A DNA stretch of 63,528 bases, filler included, from Octopus bimaculoides (taxonomy: Eukaryota), in assembly GCF_001194135.2 (NCBI RefSeq). It is 6 parts of 6 records of this genome, joined end to end, with 100 filler letters (N's around TTAATTAATTAA, not from the genome) between each part and the next. Parts side by side here need not be neighbours in the genome. Positions count along the whole stretch, not along the records: positions 26,276 to 42,157 come from NC_069004.1; 5 more parts are not named here. The stretch is one strand, 5' to 3'. The notes under the pieces were generated by a model. The model did no database searches. It saw only the letters and a list, made by a program, of their open reading frames with translations, and had not been told where the DNA came from. This document shows positions 26,176-37,641 of the stretch, one piece after another. Each line of letters begins with the position of its first letter. Position 1 is the first letter of the stretch. The position numbers were made by a program, and so were the translations under genes.

Positions 26176-26282
26176 NNNNNNNNNNNNNNNNNNNNNNNNN
26201 NNNNNNNNNNNNNNNNNNNTTAATTAATTAANNNNNNNNNNNNNNNNNNNNNNNNNNNNNNNNNNNNNNNNNNNNGATAGAT

Positions 26283-26650
26283 AGATATTTCTAGTGAGCC
26301 CACTTGCTTAGAGAGGCCTTAAGCAACCTCGTAAAGCCAAGAGCTTTATAGACTTGAAACCCTGGGCAACGCTACAGACCGGCCGTATCTATCTTTATCT
26401 ACATATCCTACTGTTCTATATAGCTTAGAGTGTTCTTCTTCGGATTTTGATTTACTGACGATACGTACATATATTGACATAGAACGAAGAAGAATTTTGA
26501 CGAAAAGATATGGCGACAGCTTTATTTACCTCGGTGACTGCTGAGTGATAGAGTGTTAGTTTTTTTGGGGGGGGGAATATTCGTAGTCGAAGTAGTTTTA
26601 GTGGTAGTTGATATAGAGATGGTATTGGTGGATACATAATTGTATTTTAG
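26283..26650. repeat. Locally repeated module B, copy 1
   Basis: Homologous to 31138-31750 (which carries a SINE insertion) and 30443-30597, e.g. gaattttgacgaaaagatatgg and cggtgactgctgagt. Confidence 0.85.
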
Positions 26651-26710
26651 GCAGGGTAAAACTACAGGGTTTTACCCCCTGTAGTTATGCCGTATTTTAT
26701 ATATAATATA

Positions 26711-26913
26711 GGTACTACTAAAGCAGCGCGGACCCGAACGCGCAGTCACGCGTCCGCGCTAGCTAATCGTGAGTGGTCGATCCTAACCCTAACCTTATCC
26801 CTAACCCTATCCCTAACCCGCGTGTGCAAATGAATACGTGTTTAGGGTTAAGGTTAGGATCGAACACTCACGACTAGCTAGCGCGTTCGGGTCCGCGCTG
26901 CTTTAGTAATACC
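26711..26913. mobile_element. 203-bp fold-back MITE with long TIRs, telomere-like repeats and apparent 9-bp TSD
   Basis: Arms ggtactactaaagcagcgcggacccgaacgcg...ctagctaatcgtgagtggtcgatcctaacc and their reverse complement at 26850-26913; tataatata on both sides (26702-26710, 26914-26922). Confidence 0.85.
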
Positions 26914-28081
26914 TATAATATATACATACATGTTATAGGTAATCTTCCAGTTTCGAGAGGTAAAAGAAATAAATAAAAATATTCAAGGGAAATAACTCAA
27001 CGACTTACCAGTATTAATATTTTTTTTTATGATAAGTTTAAAATGTCTTTTTCTTTTTACCACATGTAATAAGTCCGCATGGGACTAGACAGTCGTCGCA
27101 GGTAAACTTATTTCTAATAAGTCGACGACTCGCACACCATTCCAACATTCTGTATCTTGAGCTACCGCTTAAATCACAGATTTTCCATTATTCCTCTAAT
27201 ATAAATTCACGAGTGAGGATATCGTTTTCAGCAACAATAAGATGTTGTGCAGCCGGTCTTCCACGAGGAATTTTCGATTTCTCATAAGAAACTATGATAT
27301 TCAATCACGTGTGAGATTCATATATAAACAGTTAACGTCATTCATATCACGTGATTTATTTATAAACAAACTAGTACGGATAATACTGGTAAGACGTTCA
27401 GTTATTTCCCTTGTATTTTATTTACTTTTTTAACCTCCCGAAACTGGAAGATTACCCATGTTATATATATTATATATACACACACGCACACATGTGTATA
27501 TATATATTTATACATATGTGAATAAAAAATAAAAATAACAAAATATTAAAAAAAAGGTTTTGTATGATCGTGTATAGAGGAATATATTACTTAAAAGAGT
27601 TCCAACTCTGTTTTTTATGTTTTATTCATATTCTTATAAAATTAATGCGGGATATAGAATATGGAATATATAATATNNNNNNNNNNAAATATATAAGGAC
27701 TAATACACTTTCATGCCTCATGGCATTCATCAAGGTCCTGTCTGACAGATGTGCAGCATCTAAGCAGGATTTGTTCAAGAATTTGTGAATGTGTATCTAT
27801 TTTCCTGGAAGTTATGAGGCAACAAAGTCGTGAGGGTGAGGTACATATCTGTAGTTATGGTGGAAGTTTTATCATCCATAGAAAAGAATAGGGAAATATT
27901 TTCCCCAAAATTGTTATTATTTTCAGTTCAATATAATTACTGTATTCTTGAAGAAAATATCTTTTACCAATGCCGTTCTATATTTCCACATTTATACAAT
28001 TACCATGATCAGACAAGTGGAACACAATTCTATTATTTAAATACATTACTACAGCATTAAATCAAACTTCTTTCAACTTAC

Positions 28082-28420
28082 CTTTAGCAGATGTAAACAA
28101 TGAATCAATGTGTTATGCGNNNNNNNNNNNNNNNNNNNNNNNNNNNNNNNNNNNNNNNNNNNNNNNNNNNNNNNNNNNNNNNNNNNNNNNNNNNNNNNNN
28201 NNNNNNNNNNNNNNNNNNNNNNNNNNNNNNNNNNNNNNNNNNNNNNNNNNNNNNNNNNNNNNNNNNNNNNNNATGAGATTGACCAAGGTTTCAATCCTCA
28301 GTGACGTTGAGTTCCTAACAAGCTCAACAATAAAATCGTGAGTGAAGCTGGCTTAATGTCTCCAGCCGCACTTTCGGTCTCAAATATACCGAACTCAATG
28401 GTAACGTTCCCTTGGATATG
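28082..28420 (-). other. Putative non-coding 5' exon/promoter module A, copy 1 (donor AAG|GTAAGT at 28082/28081)
   Basis: Paralogue of 37642-37900 with a consensus donor; exon status is inferred. Confidence 0.5.
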
Positions 28421-28774
28421 TCATAAGGTCACAAGGGGACGTTGAATATTTCAAGAGGTACGAAATATTTCCAACAAATTATTTTAATCTCTAAAATATG
28501 AATAGAACATGGCAGTTTAATAGACGCAAATTCTGACAATAAACCGCTGAGCAAACCTAGCTTCTATTTCGTGAATGAAATGTTTTTCGCTGCTCCTTCC
28601 GATTTTTCTTTTTGACAAACTTAGGTTGGTTGCAAATTTTAGGTGAAAGAATATACTCACCAACAAAAGTTTAATAAGCACTGCTTGGAGATAGAATTCA
28701 GAGTGACACAATATTTCATAAATATTTACGTTTTAGTCTGTCTCAATGTTTATGATCTTTTATTTTCTAGATTT

Positions 28775-28910
28775 CATCATCGTCGTTTAACGTCCGCTTT
28801 CCATGCTAGCATGGGTTGGACGATTTGACTGACTGGAGAAAACAGATGGCTACACCAGGCTCCAATTTGATTTGACAGAGTTTCTACAGCAGGGTGCTCT
28901 TCCTAACGCC
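28775..28910 (-). mobile_element. Short RTE 3' end
   Basis: catcatcgtcgtttaacgtccgctttccatgctagcatgggttgg..., as at 15655 and 17172. Confidence 0.85.
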
Positions 28911-29009
28911 ATATATATAAAAAGAACATGACTTTCCTCCTGGGTGAATACATTTACAATTAGTAAAAACTTTTCCCATGAGAATTATTTACCACTAATA
29001 TAAGAGCAT

Positions 29010-29275
29010 GGAGGCACATAACCTAATGGTTAGAGCAGCGAACTCATGATCAAGAGATTGCAGGTTCGAATCAGAGCAGGTGATGTGTATGTTTATGAGC
29101 AAAACACCTAAGCAGAAGGTAGGGGCAAACTTCTGCAGACTCTCTCACCACAACTTTCTCTGACTCCTTCCTCCTGCAACTAGCAGCTCACCTGTAACAG
29201 ACTGGCATCCTGTCTAAGTGGGGAAACTATACGCCAATGAAACCAAGCATGGCTCAAGAAGGAACAAACAACAAC
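29010..29275 (+). mobile_element. SINE family C with 13-bp TSD
   Basis: A-box-like taacctaatgg and B box ggttcgaatc; TSD aatataagagcat (28997-29009) / aatataacagcat (29276-29288). Confidence 0.85.
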
Positions 29276-29884
29276 AATATAACAGCATCATGGTTTTTAT
29301 TTTGTAAAAATGTTTCAGATCAGTTGAGTTATTTCTATCCATACGAGAATGACTTACCACTGATATTGGAGTGAAATGGTTTCTTGCCTGTACAATCATA
29401 CCTGTGAGTAGTTAACAAAAAGGAAAAAAGCTTTACTTTATGTCTTAAACAAGTCTTATGTATGGTTTGCTTTAGGGAAAATGGTTTTTNNNNNNNNNNN
29501 NNNNNNNNNNNNNNNNNNNNNNNNNNNNNNNNNNNNNNNNNNNNNNNNNNNNNNNNNNNNNNNNNNNNNNNNNNNNNNNNNNNNNNNNNATATCTTTAAT
29601 GTCAATGTCTCAGATAGCCTGAAATGAGAGAGAAATAGTTTAAGGTATTAAAAATGCAGAGATTCAATAGTGGAAGTTTATAATTCTATATTGATAAACC
29701 ATAAACGTTTACCCCCAACAAATAAACTTTACATTTTGCTTTACTATTTAAATTACATCTGAAAGCGATACCTTTCCCTATTCTTATATATTCTCGTTCC
29801 AATATAACTACCTACATCCAAGTAAAGCAATTCTATTATTTATATACAGTATTACAGCGTTAAAACAATCGTGTATCAGCTTAC

Positions 29885-30100
29885 CATTTTCAGATGTAAA
29901 CAGTGAATCAACGTGTCATATGTTATCCCCAAACTAAATAATGATTTGTCAACTTTATTCTACGCCAACATTCAAATTGTTCTGGATTTCTTCAACAATA
30001 AAATTTCACTTTATCCCAATGAACGCGTGAAGCTGACTTTATGTCACCAGCCGCATTTTCGGTGTCGAATATTATAATGGTAACGTCTCCTTGGAGAGTT
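29885..30100 (-). other. Putative non-coding 5' exon/promoter module A, diverged copy 3 (donor ATG|GTAAGC at 29885/29884)
   Basis: Retains aattctattattta, cagatgtaaaca.tgaatcaa.gtgt, cagccgca.tttcggt and atggtaacgt blocks in the same order as the other two copies. Confidence 0.5.
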
Positions 30101-30442
30101 GCAATATTTGGTGCTGAGTGTTTCTGGTGAAATGTAATTTTTCATCGCGATAAAATATTTAGACTTCATGCGATACTTACACTTTAAAAACATTTGAAAG
30201 AAAATTAAAAGATCACCAATTTATTTTTTAGAATTTGATAGTATATTGTGAGTTAGAAAACGCGGTAATTATTTCATCAAATGATATAATAATTACTGTT
30301 TTTCCGTCTCTCCCCTCAAATATGATAGCCAAACCTTGGGTGGATGCTATATTTTGGCGAAAGAAGATGCTTATCAACAAAAATTCGATAATCACCGCTT
30401 TGGCGTGTTATAATCATTCCCAGATATATATATATATATATA

Positions 30443-30597
30443 GGAACGGAGAATTTTGACGAAAAGATATGGCGACAACATTACTTACCTCGGTGACTGC
30501 TGAGTGATATAGTGTGTTTTTGGGGGGGTAAAATTTGTAGTAGTTCTAGTGGTAGTTGATGAAGAGATGGTGGTGACGTATACATAATTGTATTATA
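30443..30597. repeat. Module B, copy 2
   Basis: Homology to 26480-26645; carries minus-strand GAG|GTAAGT at 30489/30488. Confidence 0.8.
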
Positions 30598-31046
30598 TAT
30601 ATATATATATANNNNNNNNNNNNNNNNNNNNNNNNNNNNNNNNNNNNNNNNNNNNNNNNNNNNNNNNNNNNNNNNNNNNNNNNNNNNNNNNNNNNNNNNN
30701 NNNNNNNNNNNNNNNNNNNNNNNNNNNNNNNNNNNNNNNNNNNNNNNNNNNNNNNNNNNNNNNNNNNNNNNNNNNNNNNNNNNNNNNNNNNNNNNNNNNN
30801 NNNNNNNNNNNNNNNNNNNNNNNNNNNNNNNNNNNNNNNNNNNNNNNNNNNNNNNNNNNNNNNNNNNNNNNNNNNNNNNNNNNNNNNNNNNNNNNNNNNN
30901 NNNNNNNNNNNNNNNNNNNNNNNNNNNNNNNNNNNNNNNNNNNATATATATATATATATACATACATGTTATATATATATATATATATATATACATACAT
31001 GTTATATATATTATATATACACAAACACGTGTGTGTATGTATGTGC

Positions 31047-31087
<41 letters not shown>

Positions 31088-31137
31088 AATAATGAGTATA
31101 TGCATATATACGTACATGTATGTACATACATCTACCT

Positions 31138-31750
31138 AGATTTTCTAGTGAGTCCACTTGCTTAGAGCGGTCTTAGGCTAACGCGTTTAGTGCCTGAAGA
31201 AACTTCATAAAGCCAAGCGCTTTATAGACGTGAAACCCTGGGCAACCCTACAGACGGGCCGTATCTATCTTTATTTTCTATCCTACTGTTCTATCGGATT
31301 TTGATTTACTGACTATACGTACATATATTGACACTGAGTAAAGAGACATGCAAGTGAAACGAAGAAGAATTTTGACGAAAAGATATGGTGACTGCTGAGT
31401 TATAGAGTGTGTGTGGTTGGTAATATTTGTAGTAGTAGTAGTAGTCGTCGTAGTTGGAGATAAGGCGCCGAGCTGGCAGAAACGTTAGCATGCCGGGTGA
31501 AATGCTTTGCGGTATTTCGTCTGCCGTTACTGTTCTGAGTTCAAATTCCGCTGGGGTCGACTTTGCCTTTTATCCTTTCGGTGTCGATAAATTAAGTACC
31601 AGTTACGCTCTGGGGTCGATGTAGTCGACTTAATCCCTTTGTCTGTCCTTGTTTGTCCCCTCTATGTTTAGCCCCTTGTGGGTAATAAAGAAATAAGTAG
31701 TAGTTTTAATAATAGTAGTTGATGTAGAGATGGATACATAATTGTATTAT
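31138..31750. repeat. Module B, copy 3, interrupted by a SINE
   Basis: Homology to 26283-26650; the donor-containing segment is deleted in this copy. Confidence 0.85.
31462..31695 (+). mobile_element. Near-complete tRNA-derived SINE, family A
   Basis: aaggcgccgagctggcagaaacgttagc...gagttcaaattccg..ggggtcgactttgccttttatcctttcgg.gtcgataaattaagtaccag...aataaagaaata. Confidence 0.9.
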
Positions 31751-31989
31751 ATATATTACACACACACACACACATATAATACTTTGTATTATATTATACT
31801 CATTTATTGTGCTTTTAATTATTTTTTCTATATGTGACAGTGGATTTTCATTGATGAGTTCATGAACCTTGGTTCTTTTCCCTAAAACTATATATTTATA
31901 TATATTCTATACTGTGAAACTTAATTTAATTTTAATTTTTAATAAATGGATTTTAATTGAGTTTTTACCTGTAATTTTGGATTTTATCC

Positions 31990-32025
<36 letters not shown>

Positions 32026-32483
32026 TAGATAGATATATCCACTCTTGTCTGTAAAATAAAGTGTCCCAAATATAACTTTAACAGTAGAAGTACTTAGAAA
32101 GAGAAATAGACGAATCACTAAGTTTATGAATAACTACCTTTGGGAGTTTATTAGTTAAGTGACTCAACTATTTAGGGAATCCTGCTGTCAGACATAGTAA
32201 AATTTAAGCATAATCTAAGGCAATTGGTCCGGTACAATAGCTTTTGATCGTACTTTTACTAATAATAACTACAATTGATAATATGTAGGTATAGTTTTTA
32301 TATATGTAGAAGTTTCAATGAGAATTCGGAGACTGTACTCTGGACGTAATCTTAGCGTTTAACGACATGAAGATGCATACGAGTATATATATAATACAAT
32401 TATGTATCCACCACCACCATCTTTACATCAACTATAACCACTACTACAAATATTACCCCACCCCACCACACACACACTCTATA

Positions 32484-32520
<37 letters not shown>

Positions 32521-32596
32521 GCATGTGCGACCGTTTCACAGGCATGCCTTATATATGTGCTTGTCTTTTGTTTTCTGTACATTTGAACGACACACA

Positions 32597-32803
32597 CGCG
32601 TCGCCAGCACCACCTCACTGGCCCTTGTGCACTTAAAAGCACCCACTACACTCTCGGAGTGGTTGGCGTTAGGAAGGGCATCCAGCTCTGCCAAATCAGA
32701 TTGGAGCCTGGTGTCGCCTCCTGGTCCACAGTCCTCAGTCAAATCGTCCAACCCATGCTAGCATGGAAAGCAGATGTTAAACGACGATGATGATGATGAT
32801 GAT
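32597..32803 (+). mobile_element. RTE 3' end with (GAT)n tail
   Basis: Reverse complement of the 15655/17172 ends. Confidence 0.85.
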
Positions 32804-34239
32804 ATATATATATATATCATATTAATTAATAGTAGGAGATGGATTTCGTATTAGATTTTTATTAAGTCCAACATATGTTTCAACGCAGCTGTCTGGGTCT
32901 TTTCAGGTACATTGACAAAGAAATCTCACTAGAGATTTTATGAGTTGGCTGGCTTGTTGTTATATGCCCGTCTAGTTTCAGAATGAATAAAAACAAAAAA
33001 TTTTATAGAAACGCAAAAAATTCAAATATGAACGTGGAATTAGTGGGAAAATGAGTAACTTCTGATTTCTTATTACTTTTTCCTTAACTGTTTGAAATCA
33101 TTACATTGTAAGTATTGCATCGTCTTTAGGAGTAAAAATTGGTCTGCATAGTTAAGAGAAAGTGAAAAACTAAATAAATGGGTCTAAGGAGGGAGAGTGG
33201 AAGCACAAAATGGAGGGATTGCAATATGTTCAGTTTTAATATCACATAATCACAAGGGCAGTGGAGAGGTGGGCATTACAATATGAATTGTGGGGAAGAG
33301 ACAAGTCAGGGACAGAGACATTAACAATATGCTTTTAGGTCCTCATTTGAGCATAAATGTCTTTTAGATATACATATGTATTAGATGTATTTATAAATAT
33401 GTTATATATAAGCCTTAGATAGTGTGTATGTATTATAATATTCATATAGACATAGTTCTATAAACACATAAATGTTAAGTGCAACAAGCAGAGGATACCA
33501 AATGTAACAGTATAATTGTAAGTGGTTAATTATGGCAGATTGAGAAGTGGTACCAGTAATTATTTCTGAATGTCTTTGAAAGAAATTTACACAAGACGAT
33601 TTATATTCATTATAGATTTTATTCCATCATCAAGAAGTTTTTCACAATTGCTATGAATTGGAAGTAAATACAAATGCTGACTGTGTAGGTTGCTATTAAT
33701 TTGATGGGAAGCTTGCAGGTCTAATAAAATAAAATACCAGTTAAGAATTGGGGTTAATGGTACAGACTGACTACCTTACATCAAAATTCCTGTCCTTTTG
33801 CTTAAGTCAAATTTTCTTTTGTTTGTTTTTAGCTTGTGCCAGAATTTATAACTTTACAATGTTTTGTATTATAATAAAATGGGGTGAAAATAAAGAAAGA
33901 TAAAATGTGGCATTCAAAGTTCATCAATGTTGGTGTCTTTTGTTGAATATTTTTTAACTGTCTATGAATGGCCTCCAAAGGAGAGAAAAAGAAATTCACT
34001 CTCCAAGTTGCCAAATAAAGAGAATGTTTTCTTCTACAAATATCCCACTACACTGCCATGCTGAAGTTGATCTAGGTCAATATCAATGGAATTGAATGAG
34101 ATGTCTTGATTGGACCTTGTCTCACCTAGGATGGTGGAGAATTTGACATGTAACATTAATAAATTCTATGAGCAGATTCTAAGACCAACGGACAGAAACA
34201 TGAAGAGTGAGGTTTCAATTCTTGGTAATAAATAGATTA

Positions 34240-34400
34240 TCTTTTACTTGCTTCAGTCATTAGACAGCAGCCTTGAAGGGTTTAGTCAAACAAATTATCT
34301 CAGGTACATATTTTTAAAGTCTGCTACTTATTCTGTGTACCTCTTTTACCAAACTACTAGGTCACAGTGATGTAAAGAAGCCAGCACCAGCCATCATGAT
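34240..34400 (-). mobile_element. SINE family D, old copy
   Basis: cttttacttgcttcagtcattagac.gc.gcc.tgaagggtttagtc, shared with 42750-42920 and the reverse complement of 52215-52370. Confidence 0.6.
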
Positions 34401-34769
34401 GGAAGGTGAGGTGGGTCAAGAATGAACAGAAAAACACCTCTTACACATAGTATACATATGCACGAACACATATATTCACAGACAATCCTTCATGAACAAA
34501 CATTTACACAAATGTGTAAATAAATAGTACATATCAACATTTAACGTCTGTGACCTGTAATTGCATCAGTTGAAAATCTATTATTCTCAAGAATGTCGTT
34601 TATTATGCAAATCTACAGGATTCCTTACTCAGGAATTGAAGTTACTCTCACATCATAAACTATTACATTTAACACTTAATCCATGCTTATATTCTCTGCA
34701 CCAAAGATGACAAAATAGTATACAATGACATTTTTCTCTCCATAAAAACATCTTTTATCACTGTTACAT

Positions 34770-34917
34770 AAGCCATGGTCATTTATCACTTTGATACAGT
34801 CTCTCTGTTGTATGAATGTGTCTCTTATGTATCGTTAAATAACTTGTTCAAGAGAATGATTTACCAAAGATACTAGTGATATGGTTTTTTACTTTGAATT
34901 AATTACACACACATATC
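34770..34917 (-). pseudogene. Decayed zinc-finger repeats after the ZNF-A stop codon
   Basis: Minus translation KKPYH / SIFGKSFS*TSYLTIHKRHIHTTERLYQSDK*. Confidence 0.8.
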
Positions 34918-36294
34918 TCAGAGATATGGTTTTTCCCCTGTATGAATACGTTTGTGAAATTTTAATGTGCTTCCATAGGTGAATGATTTATCACAGATAT
35001 TACAGTGATATGGTCTTTCCCCTGTATGAGTACGTCTGTGAACTGTTAATTGACTTCCAACAGGGAATGATTTACCACAGGTATCACAGCGATATGGTTT
35101 CTCTCTTGTATGACTGCGTCGCGTGTGTATTGTTAACTGACTTGTTTGGCTAAATGTCTTACTACAGATAACACAACAGTGTGGTTTTTCCCCTGAATGA
35201 ATACGTTTATGAACAGTTAATGTACTTCCAGAAGAGAATAATTTACCACAGATATCACAGTCATATGGTTTTCCTCCTGAATGAGTACGCTTGTGGACAG
35301 TTAAAGCACTTGCATAAGAGAATGATTTACTACAGATATCACAGTGATATGGTTTTTCCCCTGTATGAATACGTTTGTGAACAGTTAATGCACTTCCATC
35401 AGCAAATGATTTACCACAGATATTACAGTGATATGGTTTCTCTTTTGTATGAATGTATCTATTGTGTATTGTTAACTGGCTTGTCCGAGAGAATGATTTA
35501 CCACAAATATCACAGCGATATGGTTTTTCCCCTGTGTGAATACGTCTGTGGATAGTTAATTTACTCCTATGAAGAAATGATTTACCACAGATATCACAAT
35601 GATATGGTTTTTCGTCTCCATGAATACGTTTGTGAACAGTTAAATTACTTCTATCAGTGAATGATTTACTACAAATATTACAGTGATATGGCTTCTCTCT
35701 TGCATGAATACGTTTATGAGAAGTTACTGCACTTCCATTAGTAAACGACCTACCGCAAACATCACAGTGATATGGTTTCTCTCCAGTATGAATACGTTTG
35801 TGAGAATTTAAATGAACCTTTTGAAAGAATGATTTTCCACAGATATCGCAGTGATATGATTTTTTGCCAGTATGAATGTATTTGTGTTTAGCTAAATTAC
35901 CCCTTTCAGAGAAAGATTCCCCACAAATGTTACACTGATATGGTTTCTCACCTGTATGAATACGTACATGGCGAGTTAGGCCATTAGCACGAGAGAATGA
36001 TTTACCACAGACATCACAGTGATGTGGTTTTTCACCTGTATGAGTACATAAGTGATCAACTAAATAACTTCTGTAAGGGAATAATTTACCACAGATATTA
36101 CATTCATGTGACTTTTTTCTGGAATGAATGCGTTTGTGCTTAGTTAAAGTATGTTTTTCAGAGAATGATTTACCACAAATATCACATTCATATAATTTCT
36201 CTTCTGTATGCATATGCTTTTGAGTAGCAAGGGTACATTTTAAAGAGAACGATGATTCTTCTGCTCCCTTTGGCAATTCTTCAGAAAAATTCAT
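34918..36294 (-). CDS. ZNF-A: C2H2 zinc-finger array protein, 458 aa, 15 fingers
   Basis: Intact ORF with 15 CX2C-X12-HX3/4H repeats and TGEKPY-type linkers; acceptor ttacAG at 36300-36299 lies 4 nt before the ATG; candidate AATAAA at 34604-34599. Confidence 0.95.
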
Positions 36295-37641
36295 ACTTCT
36301 GTAAGGATATTTTTACCACTTTTTATATATNNNNNNNNNNNNNNNNNNNNNNNNNNNNNNNNNNNNNNNNNNNNNNNNNNNNNNNNNNNNNNNNNNNNNN
36401 NNNNNNNNNNNNNNNNNNNNNNNNNNNNNNNNNNNNNNNNNNNNNNNNNNNNNNNNNNNNNNNNNNNNNNNNNNNNNNNNNNNNNNNNNNNNNNNNNNNN
36501 NNNNNNNNNNNNNNNNNNNNNNNNNNNNNNNNNNNNATGACACAGATTATAAAGAAATTTGAGGGAAAATTTTTTCCAAGATGGGGAAAGGGGCTTTAGA
36601 TCAAGAAGACCACTTAAGTCGAACTTTCCTTGTTTTGACAGGGATTTTTCCAATTTCTTTTCACAATAACCTTGGAAATGATAGGTGGAGAAGAGTATCT
36701 TTTTATGGAAAAAGTTTTGAAAATTAATTTTTTTTACACCTCCCCTCTCTCACCATCACACTCCAGACCGATTTTGGCCAATTTTCTTTGGCACTTAAAA
36801 ACCACGGTAAAAAAAAAATTGTAAATATTTTCAGAGGAAAAAGTGTGATCTTAGTGAGATTTGGCTGTTGTTTCTAGCACATCCCAAGACAACCCTCCTC
36901 GTTTCTTTCTCACTCTTGCATGTATTGATGTTTCTCAATATTTTTCTCCCCATGAACAATTTATGCTATAAAATTAAGTTGAAAATGTATGATTTTTTTT
37001 CAAAACCACTCCCCGACCCAATTCTTTCTGTTTATAATTGAACATATCGGAGGGACTGGGGTCACTGCTGGCATTTATCAAGTCATTTAAAATAAATAAA
37101 AAAGAAGAGGTATGTAAAAGATGATTCATTTTAATAGAATACTTTTCTGTTAGAAAATGTTTAGTCTTACACACATGACTTCGCTTGATTGAGATATTGC
37201 CTTTTTTTAAAAATTATATCCTATCAGTGGACCACGGCGTATTTCTTCGACATCATCATTCCAAAAAATGTGTTTTATGGGAGAAAAATATTGCAAATAA
37301 ACATCAATATACGTGAGAGTGAAAACAAGGAGTGGTCTTGGAAACAACAGCCAAATCAAGAATTCGTGAAAAAGTATCTATTTTTCTGGAAGTTATGAGG
37401 CAACAAAGTCGTGAGGGTGAGGTACATATCTGTAGCTATGGTGGAAGTTTTATCATCCATAGAAAAGAATAGGGAAATATTTTCAGTTCAATATAATTAC
37501 TGTATTCTTGAAGAAAATATCTTTTACCAATGCCGTTATATATTTCCACATTTATACAATTACCATGATCAGACAAGTGGAACACAATTCTATTATTTAA
37601 ATACATTACTACAGCATGAAATCAAACTTCTTTAAACTTAC

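What the first reader, a model, noticed from the sequence alone, without database searches (positions are those of the whole stretch)
28912..30100. A third zinc-finger gene is probably hidden in the 100-N gap at 29490-29589
Reading the minus strand, a diverged copy of the putative ZNF 5' exon with a GT donor (29885/29884) runs into the gap. The sequence leaving the gap (29489 to 28912) is a close paralogue of the region just downstream of ZNF-B, including the same decayed fingers and the same TSD-flanked SINE. It stops about 190 bp short of where the ZNF-B stop codon would map. Both flanks of a ZNF gene are present and only the repetitive CDS is missing, as expected if a finger array collapsed in a short-read assembly. 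The homologies are seen directly; the gene is inferred.
Basis: partly seen in the sequence, partly recalled or inferred. Interest (0 to 1): 0.75.

Follow-up and report, generated by a model that had tools for sequence, protein, structure and literature searches.

The report
Zinc-finger gene probably lost in gap
A 100-N placeholder join in the short-read octopus genome sits where a tandem array of zinc-finger genes should carry one more coding exon, so a gene copy is probably unassembled there; this is an assembly issue in a known expanded gene family, not new biology.

Summary
The piece is Octopus bimaculoides GCA_001194135.2, CM046624.1; the gap maps to about 8,316,822-8,316,921. It holds a minus-strand tandem array of C2H2 zinc-finger genes.

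- Upstream of the gap lies a diverged (76-80%) copy of the array's non-coding 5' exon. Its GT donor aligns with the paralogues' donors, and 295 nt of intron-like sequence follow.
- Downstream, 29489-26276 is collinear over 3.2 kb (81-98% by block) with the 3' flank of a gene just outside the piece (ZNF-U), the next gene's 5' exon and its intron. It is also 93.7% identical to the ZNF-B flank.
- Homology runs right up to the gap edge. That edge maps 131 nt (ZNF-U) or 187 nt (ZNF-B) past a stop codon.
- This assembly is the 2015 shotgun assembly plus Hi-C, with no gaps closed. The same supplement gives 100 bp as the default gap (stated for the squid assembly) and reports 0.14 Gb of unplaced scaffolds.

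So the gap length tells us little, and at least one ZNF coding exon probably lies there (about 0.7). I could not show the gene. Its intactness, its link to this 5' exon and the adjacency of the two sides are untested. Interest is low.

The parts
29885..30095 (-). Diverged copy ('copy 3') of the array's putative non-coding 5' exon. Its 5' limit is unknown; the alignable blocks are 30095-30027 and 29936-29885.
   Evidence: 76-80% identity to the copies at 37863-37642, 28416-28082 and L001 5700-5919.
29590..29884 (-). GT donor (29884-29883) followed by 295 nt of intron-like sequence that runs into the gap.
   Evidence: The donor aligns with GTAAG in all copies. Only the first 57 nt (29884-29828) align with paralogue introns. 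29827-29590 has no match in the piece or in L001. It contains no finger remnant.
29490..29589 (.). 100-N assembly gap, most likely a default-length Hi-C scaffold join (CM046624.1 about 8,316,822-8,316,921).
   Evidence: It is the only gap of exactly 100 N among gaps of 10, 153, 332, 206, 775 and 2452 N. Assembly methods are in the PMC9068888 supplement. The contig ends on either side are not low-complexity sequence.
28913..29489 (-). 3' flank of a ZNF gene ('C flank'). It begins 131 nt (ZNF-U) or 187 nt (ZNF-B) downstream of where the paralogues' stop codons map.
   Evidence: 97.4% then 93.4% identity to L001 4612-5501 (ZNF-U flank). 93.4-93.7% identity to 40137-39471 (ZNF-B flank).
29344..29415 (-). 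Relic (decayed) C2H2 fingers within the flank.
   Evidence: tblastn with a finger consensus gives LTTHRYDCTGKKP / FHSNISGKSFS; the same relics sit at 39900-40016.
29010..29276 (+). tRNA-like SINE with 13-nt target-site duplications (29289-29277 and 29009-28997). It is shared by the U, B and C flanks, so it predates the duplications.
   Evidence: Three-way alignment and sequence read directly. Not recognised by ARAGORN or Rfam.
28774..28911 (-). Second interspersed repeat. It is shared at the same site by the C and U units and is absent from the ZNF-B unit.
   Evidence: Another copy in inverted orientation lies at 32664-32793.
28082..28416 (-). 5' exon 'copy 4', interrupted by the 153-N gap at 28120-28272; donor GT at 28081-28080.
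   Evidence: 94-97.5% identity to ZNF-B's 5' exon at L001 5497-6001.
26276..28081 (-). Intron following copy 4. It is collinear with the ZNF-B intron all the way to the piece edge.
   Evidence: Identity is 81-97.6%. 26646-26276 matches L001 7136-7503 at 97.6%, and the match ends 38 nt before the 2452-N gap that precedes the ZNF-B coding exon. The contig ends in a TC/TA/TG microsatellite.

Best explanation
The 100 N mark a placeholder join in a short-read assembly, inside a tandem array of octopus C2H2 zinc-finger genes. In the real chromosome, at least one ZNF coding exon (a close paralogue of ZNF-U/ZNF-B) lies just upstream of 29489, together with the rest of an intron and 131-187 nt of flank. 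It was not assembled or placed here because near-identical paralogous finger arrays cannot be resolved with short reads; the exon may be collapsed onto a paralogue or sit on an unplaced scaffold.

Shown: the homologies, the array structure, and the absence of any finger sequence between 29590 and 34733.

From the literature: the assembly history and the 100-bp default gap.

Inferred: that the coding exon exists, that it is intact, and that it is spliced to the 5' exon at 30095-29885.
For: (1) Array structure. ZNF-U, ZNF-B and ZNF-A each have one coding exon that starts (t)ag|AAGTATG, and they encode 458-958 aa of C2H2 fingers (Pfam scan of ZNF-B and ZNF-A). For ZNF-B and ZNF-A a conserved 5' exon with a GTAAG donor lies 1.3-4 kb upstream.

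(2) Collinear block. 29489-26276 is collinear over its full 3.2 kb with ZNF-U flank -> ZNF-B exon 1 -> ZNF-B intron (L001 4612-7503), at 81-98% by block. Both ends of the block are cut by assembly breaks, not by loss of homology.

(3) Edge of the gap. The last 76 nt before the gap are 97.4% identical to the ZNF-U flank, and the first 50 nt are identical. In both paralogues an intact ZNF ORF ends 131 or 187 nt further on.

(4) Spacing. From the flank start to the next 5' exon is about 1.1-1.2 kb in both the U and C units.

(5) Assembly history. The assembly is the 2015 shotgun assembly scaffolded with HiRise and Juicebox, and the authors 'did not attempt to... close any gaps'. 0.14 Gb remains in unplaced small scaffolds. 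The same supplement speaks of 'the default gap of 100 bp'. Neighbouring gaps have non-round sizes.

(6) Orientation. Both sides have the orientation and polarity expected of one unit: a 5' part on one side and a 3' part on the other.
Against: - No sequence of the supposed exon was recovered. Three protein searches found nothing above 68% identity. The exact ZNF-U, -B and -A proteins are not in that protein collection. ORFs next to the gap are not on record elsewhere.
- The 5' exon copy is about 20% diverged while the flank is 4-5% diverged, so the two sides need not be parts of one recently duplicated gene.
- 29590-29827 matches no paralogue intron.
- The 50-nt identical run at the contig end is not unusual: runs of 64, 59 and 51 nt occur elsewhere in the same alignment. 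It is therefore not evidence for collapse.
- The 'default 100 bp' wording in the supplement refers to the squid assembly, and I extend it to the octopus by inference. I could not see the AGP file or the v1 scaffolds.
Confidence: 0.7

Rival explanations
1. CDS-less relic. The gap really is about 100 nt. Either a partial duplication (its breakpoint within the 131 nt beyond 29489) or a later deletion of at least 2.7 kb has left a 5' exon and a 3' flank with no coding exon between them.
For: The nominal gap length is 100. Within-scaffold gap estimates nearby are small: the 153-N gap at 28120-28272 corresponds to only about 41 nt in the paralogue. The flank already carries one private 90-nt deletion and 20 private substitutions, against 3 for ZNF-U and 11 for ZNF-B, which fits a decaying copy. 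No candidate protein was found.
Against: It needs a breakpoint to coincide with a contig end. Homology is at its highest (97.4%) right at that end. A gap of exactly 100 N among non-round gaps in a HiRise/Juicebox assembly points to a default join. Unique sequence across a true breakpoint would normally have been bridged by the paired reads of the original assembly.
Confidence: 0.15
2. Scaffolding artefact. The two sides are ends of different original scaffolds that Hi-C placed side by side, but they are not immediate neighbours, or one small scaffold is mis-ordered. Each end still points at an unassembled ZNF exon, but no single gene spans the join, and two or more genes may be missing.
For: Hi-C ordering has limited resolution at the kilobase scale. 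0.14 Gb of small scaffolds remain unplaced. The divergence of the two sides is unequal, about 20% against 4-5%. The intron side has no homology to paralogue introns.
Against: Order, orientation and polarity are exactly what one array unit requires. The distance from ZNF-A's stop to the 5' exon copy (4.8 kb) and from the C flank to the next 5' exon (about 1.1 kb) fit the array.
Confidence: 0.2
3. The 5' exon copy at 30095-29885 is a dead relic, or merely part of the duplicated intergenic block. The hidden gene, if present, uses its own 5' exon, which is also inside the gap.
For: Copy 3 is the most diverged of the four copies, at 76-80% against 91-97.5% among the others. Divergence is the same in the exon part and in the first 57 nt of the intron, which looks neutral. 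I had no transcript evidence for any of these exons.
Against: The GTAAG donor and the conserved core motif (GTTACCATT...ACCGAAArTGCGGCTGGwGACAT) are retained. Its position, 4.8 kb downstream of ZNF-A and upstream of a ZNF flank, is where a 5' exon is expected.
Confidence: 0.25

Closest known systems
Lineage-specific tandem arrays of C2H2 zinc-finger genes in coleoid cephalopods (Albertin et al. 2015, from my own knowledge; Albertin et al. 2022, PMC9068888; PMC12513265)
   Same: Same species and same gene family. The genes are tandem and same-strand, each with many TGEKP-linked fingers in one large exon, and the intergenic DNA is rich in SINEs and repeats.
   Different: Nothing differs in kind. 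The only new element is the inference that one array member is missing from the reference at this join.
Collapsed or dropped paralogues of KRAB-ZNF and other tandem gene clusters in short-read vertebrate assemblies (general knowledge)
   Same: Near-identical repeated coding exons break contigs. The unique flanks are assembled and the repeated exon is collapsed or left unplaced.
   Different: Collapse is inferred here, not measured, because no read depth was available. The octopus proteins lack KRAB or SCAN domains.
Default-length (100 bp) gaps written by HiRise/Juicebox scaffolding (PMC9068888 supplement)
   Same: Exactly 100 N, in an assembly made by that pipeline, among other gaps of non-round estimated sizes.
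   Different: The supplement states the 100-bp default for the squid assembly. That it applies to this octopus join was not verified against the AGP file.

Membership tests
C2H2 (Krueppel-type) poly-zinc-finger gene | Tandem C2H2 fingers (C-x2-C-x12-H-x3-H) joined by TGEKP-like linkers in the gene product | not testable with these tools
   For the hidden gene no sequence exists. The neighbours ZNF-B and ZNF-A meet it: PF00096 at E 1.9e-105 and 3.1e-76, PF13465 at E 2e-168 and 4e-115.
C2H2 (Krueppel-type) poly-zinc-finger gene | Remnants of finger codons in the assembled sequence next to the gap | tested here: met
   Relic fingers at 29415-29344 are homologous to those at 40016-39900. They are non-coding relics and sit downstream of the paralogues' stop codons.
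Member of this local tandem array (unit = 5' exon, intron, coding exon starting ag|AAGTATG, flank with relic fingers and SINE) | 5' exon copy with an aligned GT donor upstream | tested here: met
   30095-29885 with GT at 29884-29883. Identity is only 76-80%.
Member of this local tandem array (unit = 5' exon, intron, coding exon starting ag|AAGTATG, flank with relic fingers and SINE) | 3' flank collinear with the paralogues' flanks and followed by the next unit's 5' exon | tested here: met
   29489-26276 against L001 4612-7503, 81-98% by block over 3.2 kb.
Member of this local tandem array (unit = 5' exon, intron, coding exon starting ag|AAGTATG, flank with relic fingers and SINE) | A coding exon between the 5' exon and the flank | tested here: not met
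   There is no finger-like sequence between 29590 and 34733, nor in the 339 nt between the last alignable points. If the exon exists it lies in the unread gap. No such protein or contig was found in the accessible collections.
Default-length scaffold join (size unknown) | Gap of exactly the pipeline's default length, in an assembly built by that pipeline | tested here: met
   100 N. The record is GCA_001194135.2. HiRise and Juicebox, no gaps closed, default gap of 100 bp.
Default-length scaffold join (size unknown) | The two sides are ends of different scaffolds of the earlier assembly | not testable with these tools
The look-up returned only the v2 chromosome.
CDS-less relic / deletion pseudogene | Homology to paralogues ends at a defined breakpoint inside assembled sequence | tested here: not met
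   Homology runs to the last assembled base, and the last 76 nt are 97.4% identical. No breakpoint is visible.

The most novel reading that the evidence does not exclude
The two sides really are about 100 nt apart, and the locus is a natural CDS-less unit. Its retained 5' exon and donor (29885) would then splice onward to the next coding exon downstream. The array would be using upstream 5' exons as alternative promoters for downstream finger exons. The gene model in the record that runs from ZNF-U through ZNF-B (L001 1604-11849) hints at such read-through transcription.
Probability: 0.05. Interest if true: 0.4.

Novelty: new member of a known kind. Interest (0 to 1): 0.15.

Why it matters
If confirmed, the O. 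bimaculoides reference lacks at least one C2H2 ZNF paralogue at this join, and probably many more at similar 100-N joins in ZNF clusters. Counts of the octopus ZNF expansion, and analyses of paralogue age or gene conversion based on this assembly, would then be underestimates. That is useful for annotation and for anyone re-assembling the genome with long reads. It does not change what is known about cephalopod ZNF arrays.

Tried and rejected
(1) I searched the protein collection for a close paralogue, a candidate 'ZNF-C', with three queries: whole ZNF-B, the last 112 aa of ZNF-U and the last 330 aa of ZNF-U. The hit lists were dominated by generic ZNFs, mostly vertebrate. No hit exceeded 68% identity, and listed hits never exceeded about 1.75 times the query length. 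This was uninformative, because the exact ZNF-U, -B and -A sequences are not in that collection.

(2) I made exact look-ups of ZNF-A and of the ORFs beside the gap, 29214-29399(-) and 29913-30077(+), hoping for other assemblies or read-level contigs that cross the gap. None is on record.

(3) The ZNF-B look-up returned only the same v2 chromosome. Its 10-kb flank stops at window position 30324, which is 735 nt short of the gap.

(4) I did not look up ZNF-U to fetch its own 5' exon, because the tool restricts look-ups to proteins encoded in the window.

(5) I considered the 50-nt identical run at the contig end as evidence of collapse and rejected it. Equally long runs occur elsewhere in the same alignment.

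(6) I considered the 131-nt segment between the ZNF-U stop and the flank as a dispersed repeat that might explain the contig break. Only the two paralogous copies are seen in the 26 kb available, so this is undecidable without the genome.

(7) ARAGORN and Rfam do not recognise the SINE. Its tRNA-like head and target-site duplications were read by eye.

(8) The 2015 genome paper is not held in the library. A search for a long-read O. bimaculoides assembly found none.

Full report
**Source and layout.** Window position y corresponds to about 8,287,332 + y, so the gap is at about 8,316,822-8,316,921. The fetched locus L001 is identical to window 30324-42157 (L001 x = window 52151 - x). It adds 10 kb upstream of ZNF-B.

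All genes are on the minus strand. They are ZNF-U (L001 1604-4480, 958 aa, outside the piece), ZNF-B (608 aa) and ZNF-A (36294-34918, 458 aa). ZNF-B and ZNF-A are plain poly-C2H2 proteins with no other domain. Each coding exon starts (t)ag|AAGTATG. A conserved non-coding 5' exon ending TTTACATCTGnnnAnG|GTAAG lies 1.3 kb upstream of ZNF-A and about 4 kb upstream of ZNF-B.

**Checking the observation.** The piece contains gaps of 10, 153, 100, 332 and 206 N.

On the minus strand upstream of the 100-N gap:
- 30095-30027 and 29936-29828 align to the 5' exon copies at 76-80% (E down to 5e-23).
- The GT at 29884-29883 is in register with the other donors.
- Only 57 nt of intron past the donor are alignable. 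29827-29590 matches nothing in the 26 kb available.

Downstream of the gap:
- 29489-29414 and 29415-28913 match the ZNF-B flank (40137-40062 and 39971-39471) at 93.4% and 93.7%. A private 90-nt deletion removes one relic finger.
- Position 29489 maps 187 nt past the ZNF-B stop codon.
- Relic fingers remain at 29415-29344.
- The tRNA-like SINE at 29010-29276, with 13-nt target-site duplications, is shared.

**Continuity across the gap.** No real ORF crosses the gap. In the gene's orientation both sides are non-coding. In the ZNF-B unit, the points homologous to the last alignable bases on either side are 6,038 nt apart, counting an estimated 2452-N gap. In the ZNF-A unit, the donor-side point lies 2,667 nt from the stop codon. 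Here the two points are 339 nt apart including the N. If the 100 N were literal, the whole coding exon, most of an intron and 131-187 nt of flank would be absent.

**What the wider context adds.**
- The flank is not only a ZNF-B paralogue. 29489-26276 is collinear over its whole 3.2 kb with ZNF-U flank -> ZNF-B 5' exon -> ZNF-B intron (L001 4612-7503). Block identities are 97.4, 93.4, 93.9, 97.5, 81 and 97.6%.
- It shares a second repeat (28774-28911) with the U unit that the B unit lacks.
- It contains a fourth 5' exon copy (28416-28082).
- The block is truncated at one end by the 100-N gap and at the other by the piece edge. That edge is a microsatellite 38 nt short of the position where the ZNF-B unit has a 2452-N gap just before its coding exon.
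- Over 573 gap-free flank columns there are 20 C-private, 3 U-private and 11 B-private differences. C is thus the outgroup to a U/B pair, at 4.0% from U and 5.4% from B.
- Homology is highest at the gap edge: the last 76 nt are 97.4% identical to ZNF-U and the first 50 nt are identical. Runs of that length occur elsewhere in the alignment, so this carries no extra weight.
- There is no finger-like sequence anywhere between 29590 and 34733.

**What the gap is.** The supplement of Albertin et al. 2022 (PMC9068888) describes the O. bimaculoides chromosome assembly. It was made by adding Hi-C (HiRise, curated with Juicebox) to the earlier shotgun assembly. [quoted passage not shown] For the squid, the same note mentions 'the default gap of 100 bp'.

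One gap of exactly 100 N among gaps of 10, 153, 206, 332, 775 and 2452 N is therefore most likely a default-length join whose true size is unknown. Extending the squid wording to the octopus is my inference. The contig ends at this gap are ordinary sequence, unlike the (TA)n ends of the 332-N gap. That fits a break caused by paralogous repeats rather than by low complexity. Gap estimates nearby are loose in any case: the 153-N gap corresponds to about 41 nt in the paralogue.

**Best explanation (about 0.7).** At least one ZNF coding exon, a close relative of ZNF-U/ZNF-B, lies just upstream of 29489 in the real chromosome and is missing from the reference. My rough estimates for the narrower claims are:
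- about 0.5 that it is an intact gene;

The second figure is lower because the 5' exon copy is about 20% diverged while the flank is 4-5% diverged, and because a Hi-C join does not guarantee immediate adjacency.

**Rivals.**
- A genuine CDS-less relic with a short gap (0.15).
- Non-adjacent sides, or more than one missing gene (0.2; this is compatible with missing genes).
- A dead 5' exon copy (0.25).

**Attempts to find the gene directly failed.**
- Three searches of the protein collection returned generic ZNFs only, with at most 68% identity.
- The exact ZNF-U, -B and -A sequences are not in that collection.
- ZNF-A and two ORFs beside the gap are not on record in any other assembly.
- The ZNF-B look-up returned only this chromosome.

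The absence of a hit is therefore uninformative.

**Comparison and novelty.** Tandem, lineage-specific C2H2 ZNF arrays in octopus are well described (the 2015 genome paper from my own knowledge). Loss or collapse of near-identical tandem paralogues in short-read assemblies is routine. At most this is one more array member, inferred but not seen, plus a caution that 100-N joins in ZNF clusters of this reference may hide genes. Interest is low (0.15).

Noticed in passing
window 26276-28416 (minus strand): A fourth 5' exon copy (28416-28082, donor GT at 28081-28080) and its intron are 81-97.6% identical, block by block, to ZNF-B's 5' exon and intron. They run to the piece edge at the position where ZNF-B has a large gap just before its coding exon. 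A further ZNF ('ZNF-D') probably follows beyond 26276.
   Followed up: partly
window 34918-36294 (minus strand): ZNF-A is an intact 458-aa poly-C2H2 ORF with a good acceptor (ttacag|AAGTATG). However, no gene is listed there in the record's gene table, and the protein is not on record. It looks like an unannotated gene.
   Followed up: partly
L001 1604-11849: The record's gene model whose product is the 958-aa ZNF-U protein spans from the ZNF-U start to 22 nt past the ZNF-B stop, overlapping the separate ZNF-B gene. This is either a merged annotation or read-through transcription across array units.
   Followed up: no
window 36331-36536; L001 7542-9993; L001 631-1405: All three assembled coding exons have an assembly gap just upstream of the ATG, ending 36, 7 and 198 nt before it. 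The 3' end of these introns seems systematically hard to assemble. The contig that enters the 2452-N gap ends just after a TC/TA/TG microsatellite.
   Followed up: partly
window 28120-28272: This 153-N gap inside 5' exon copy 4 corresponds to only about 41 nt in the ZNF-B paralogue (L001 5842-5883). Gap-size estimates in this region are off by about 100 nt.
   Followed up: partly
window 37642-37644 and 29885-29887; exon 2 starts at 36298 and 42154: The 5' exons of ZNF-A and of copy 3 end in ATG|GT. Spliced to AAGTATGAA..., this would give a short out-of-frame upstream ORF (ATG AAG TAT GAA TTT TTC TGA in ZNF-A) that overlaps the main start codon. The ZNF-B copy and copy 4 end in AAG|GT instead.
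   Followed up: no
L001 1604-4480 versus window 40324-42150: ZNF-U and ZNF-B share a nearly identical N-terminus (about 100 aa), and their flanks are 97.4% identical starting inside the last 55 nt of the ZNF-B-equivalent CDS. They differ by about 350 aa of internal fingers, and ZNF-U contains internally repeated finger blocks. This suggests unequal crossing-over or gene conversion within the array.
   Followed up: partly
window 30400-32650: This region is rich in (TA)n and (TATG)n-type microsatellites. It also holds several copies of one interspersed repeat, also seen at 26316-26649 and L001 6971-7327, around the 332-N gap.
   Followed up: no
window 38241-39471: The ZNF-B unit carries about 1.2 kb here. 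The U and C units instead have only the 138-nt repeat (28774-28911). This is a unit-specific insertion or replacement in the intergenic region.
   Followed up: no
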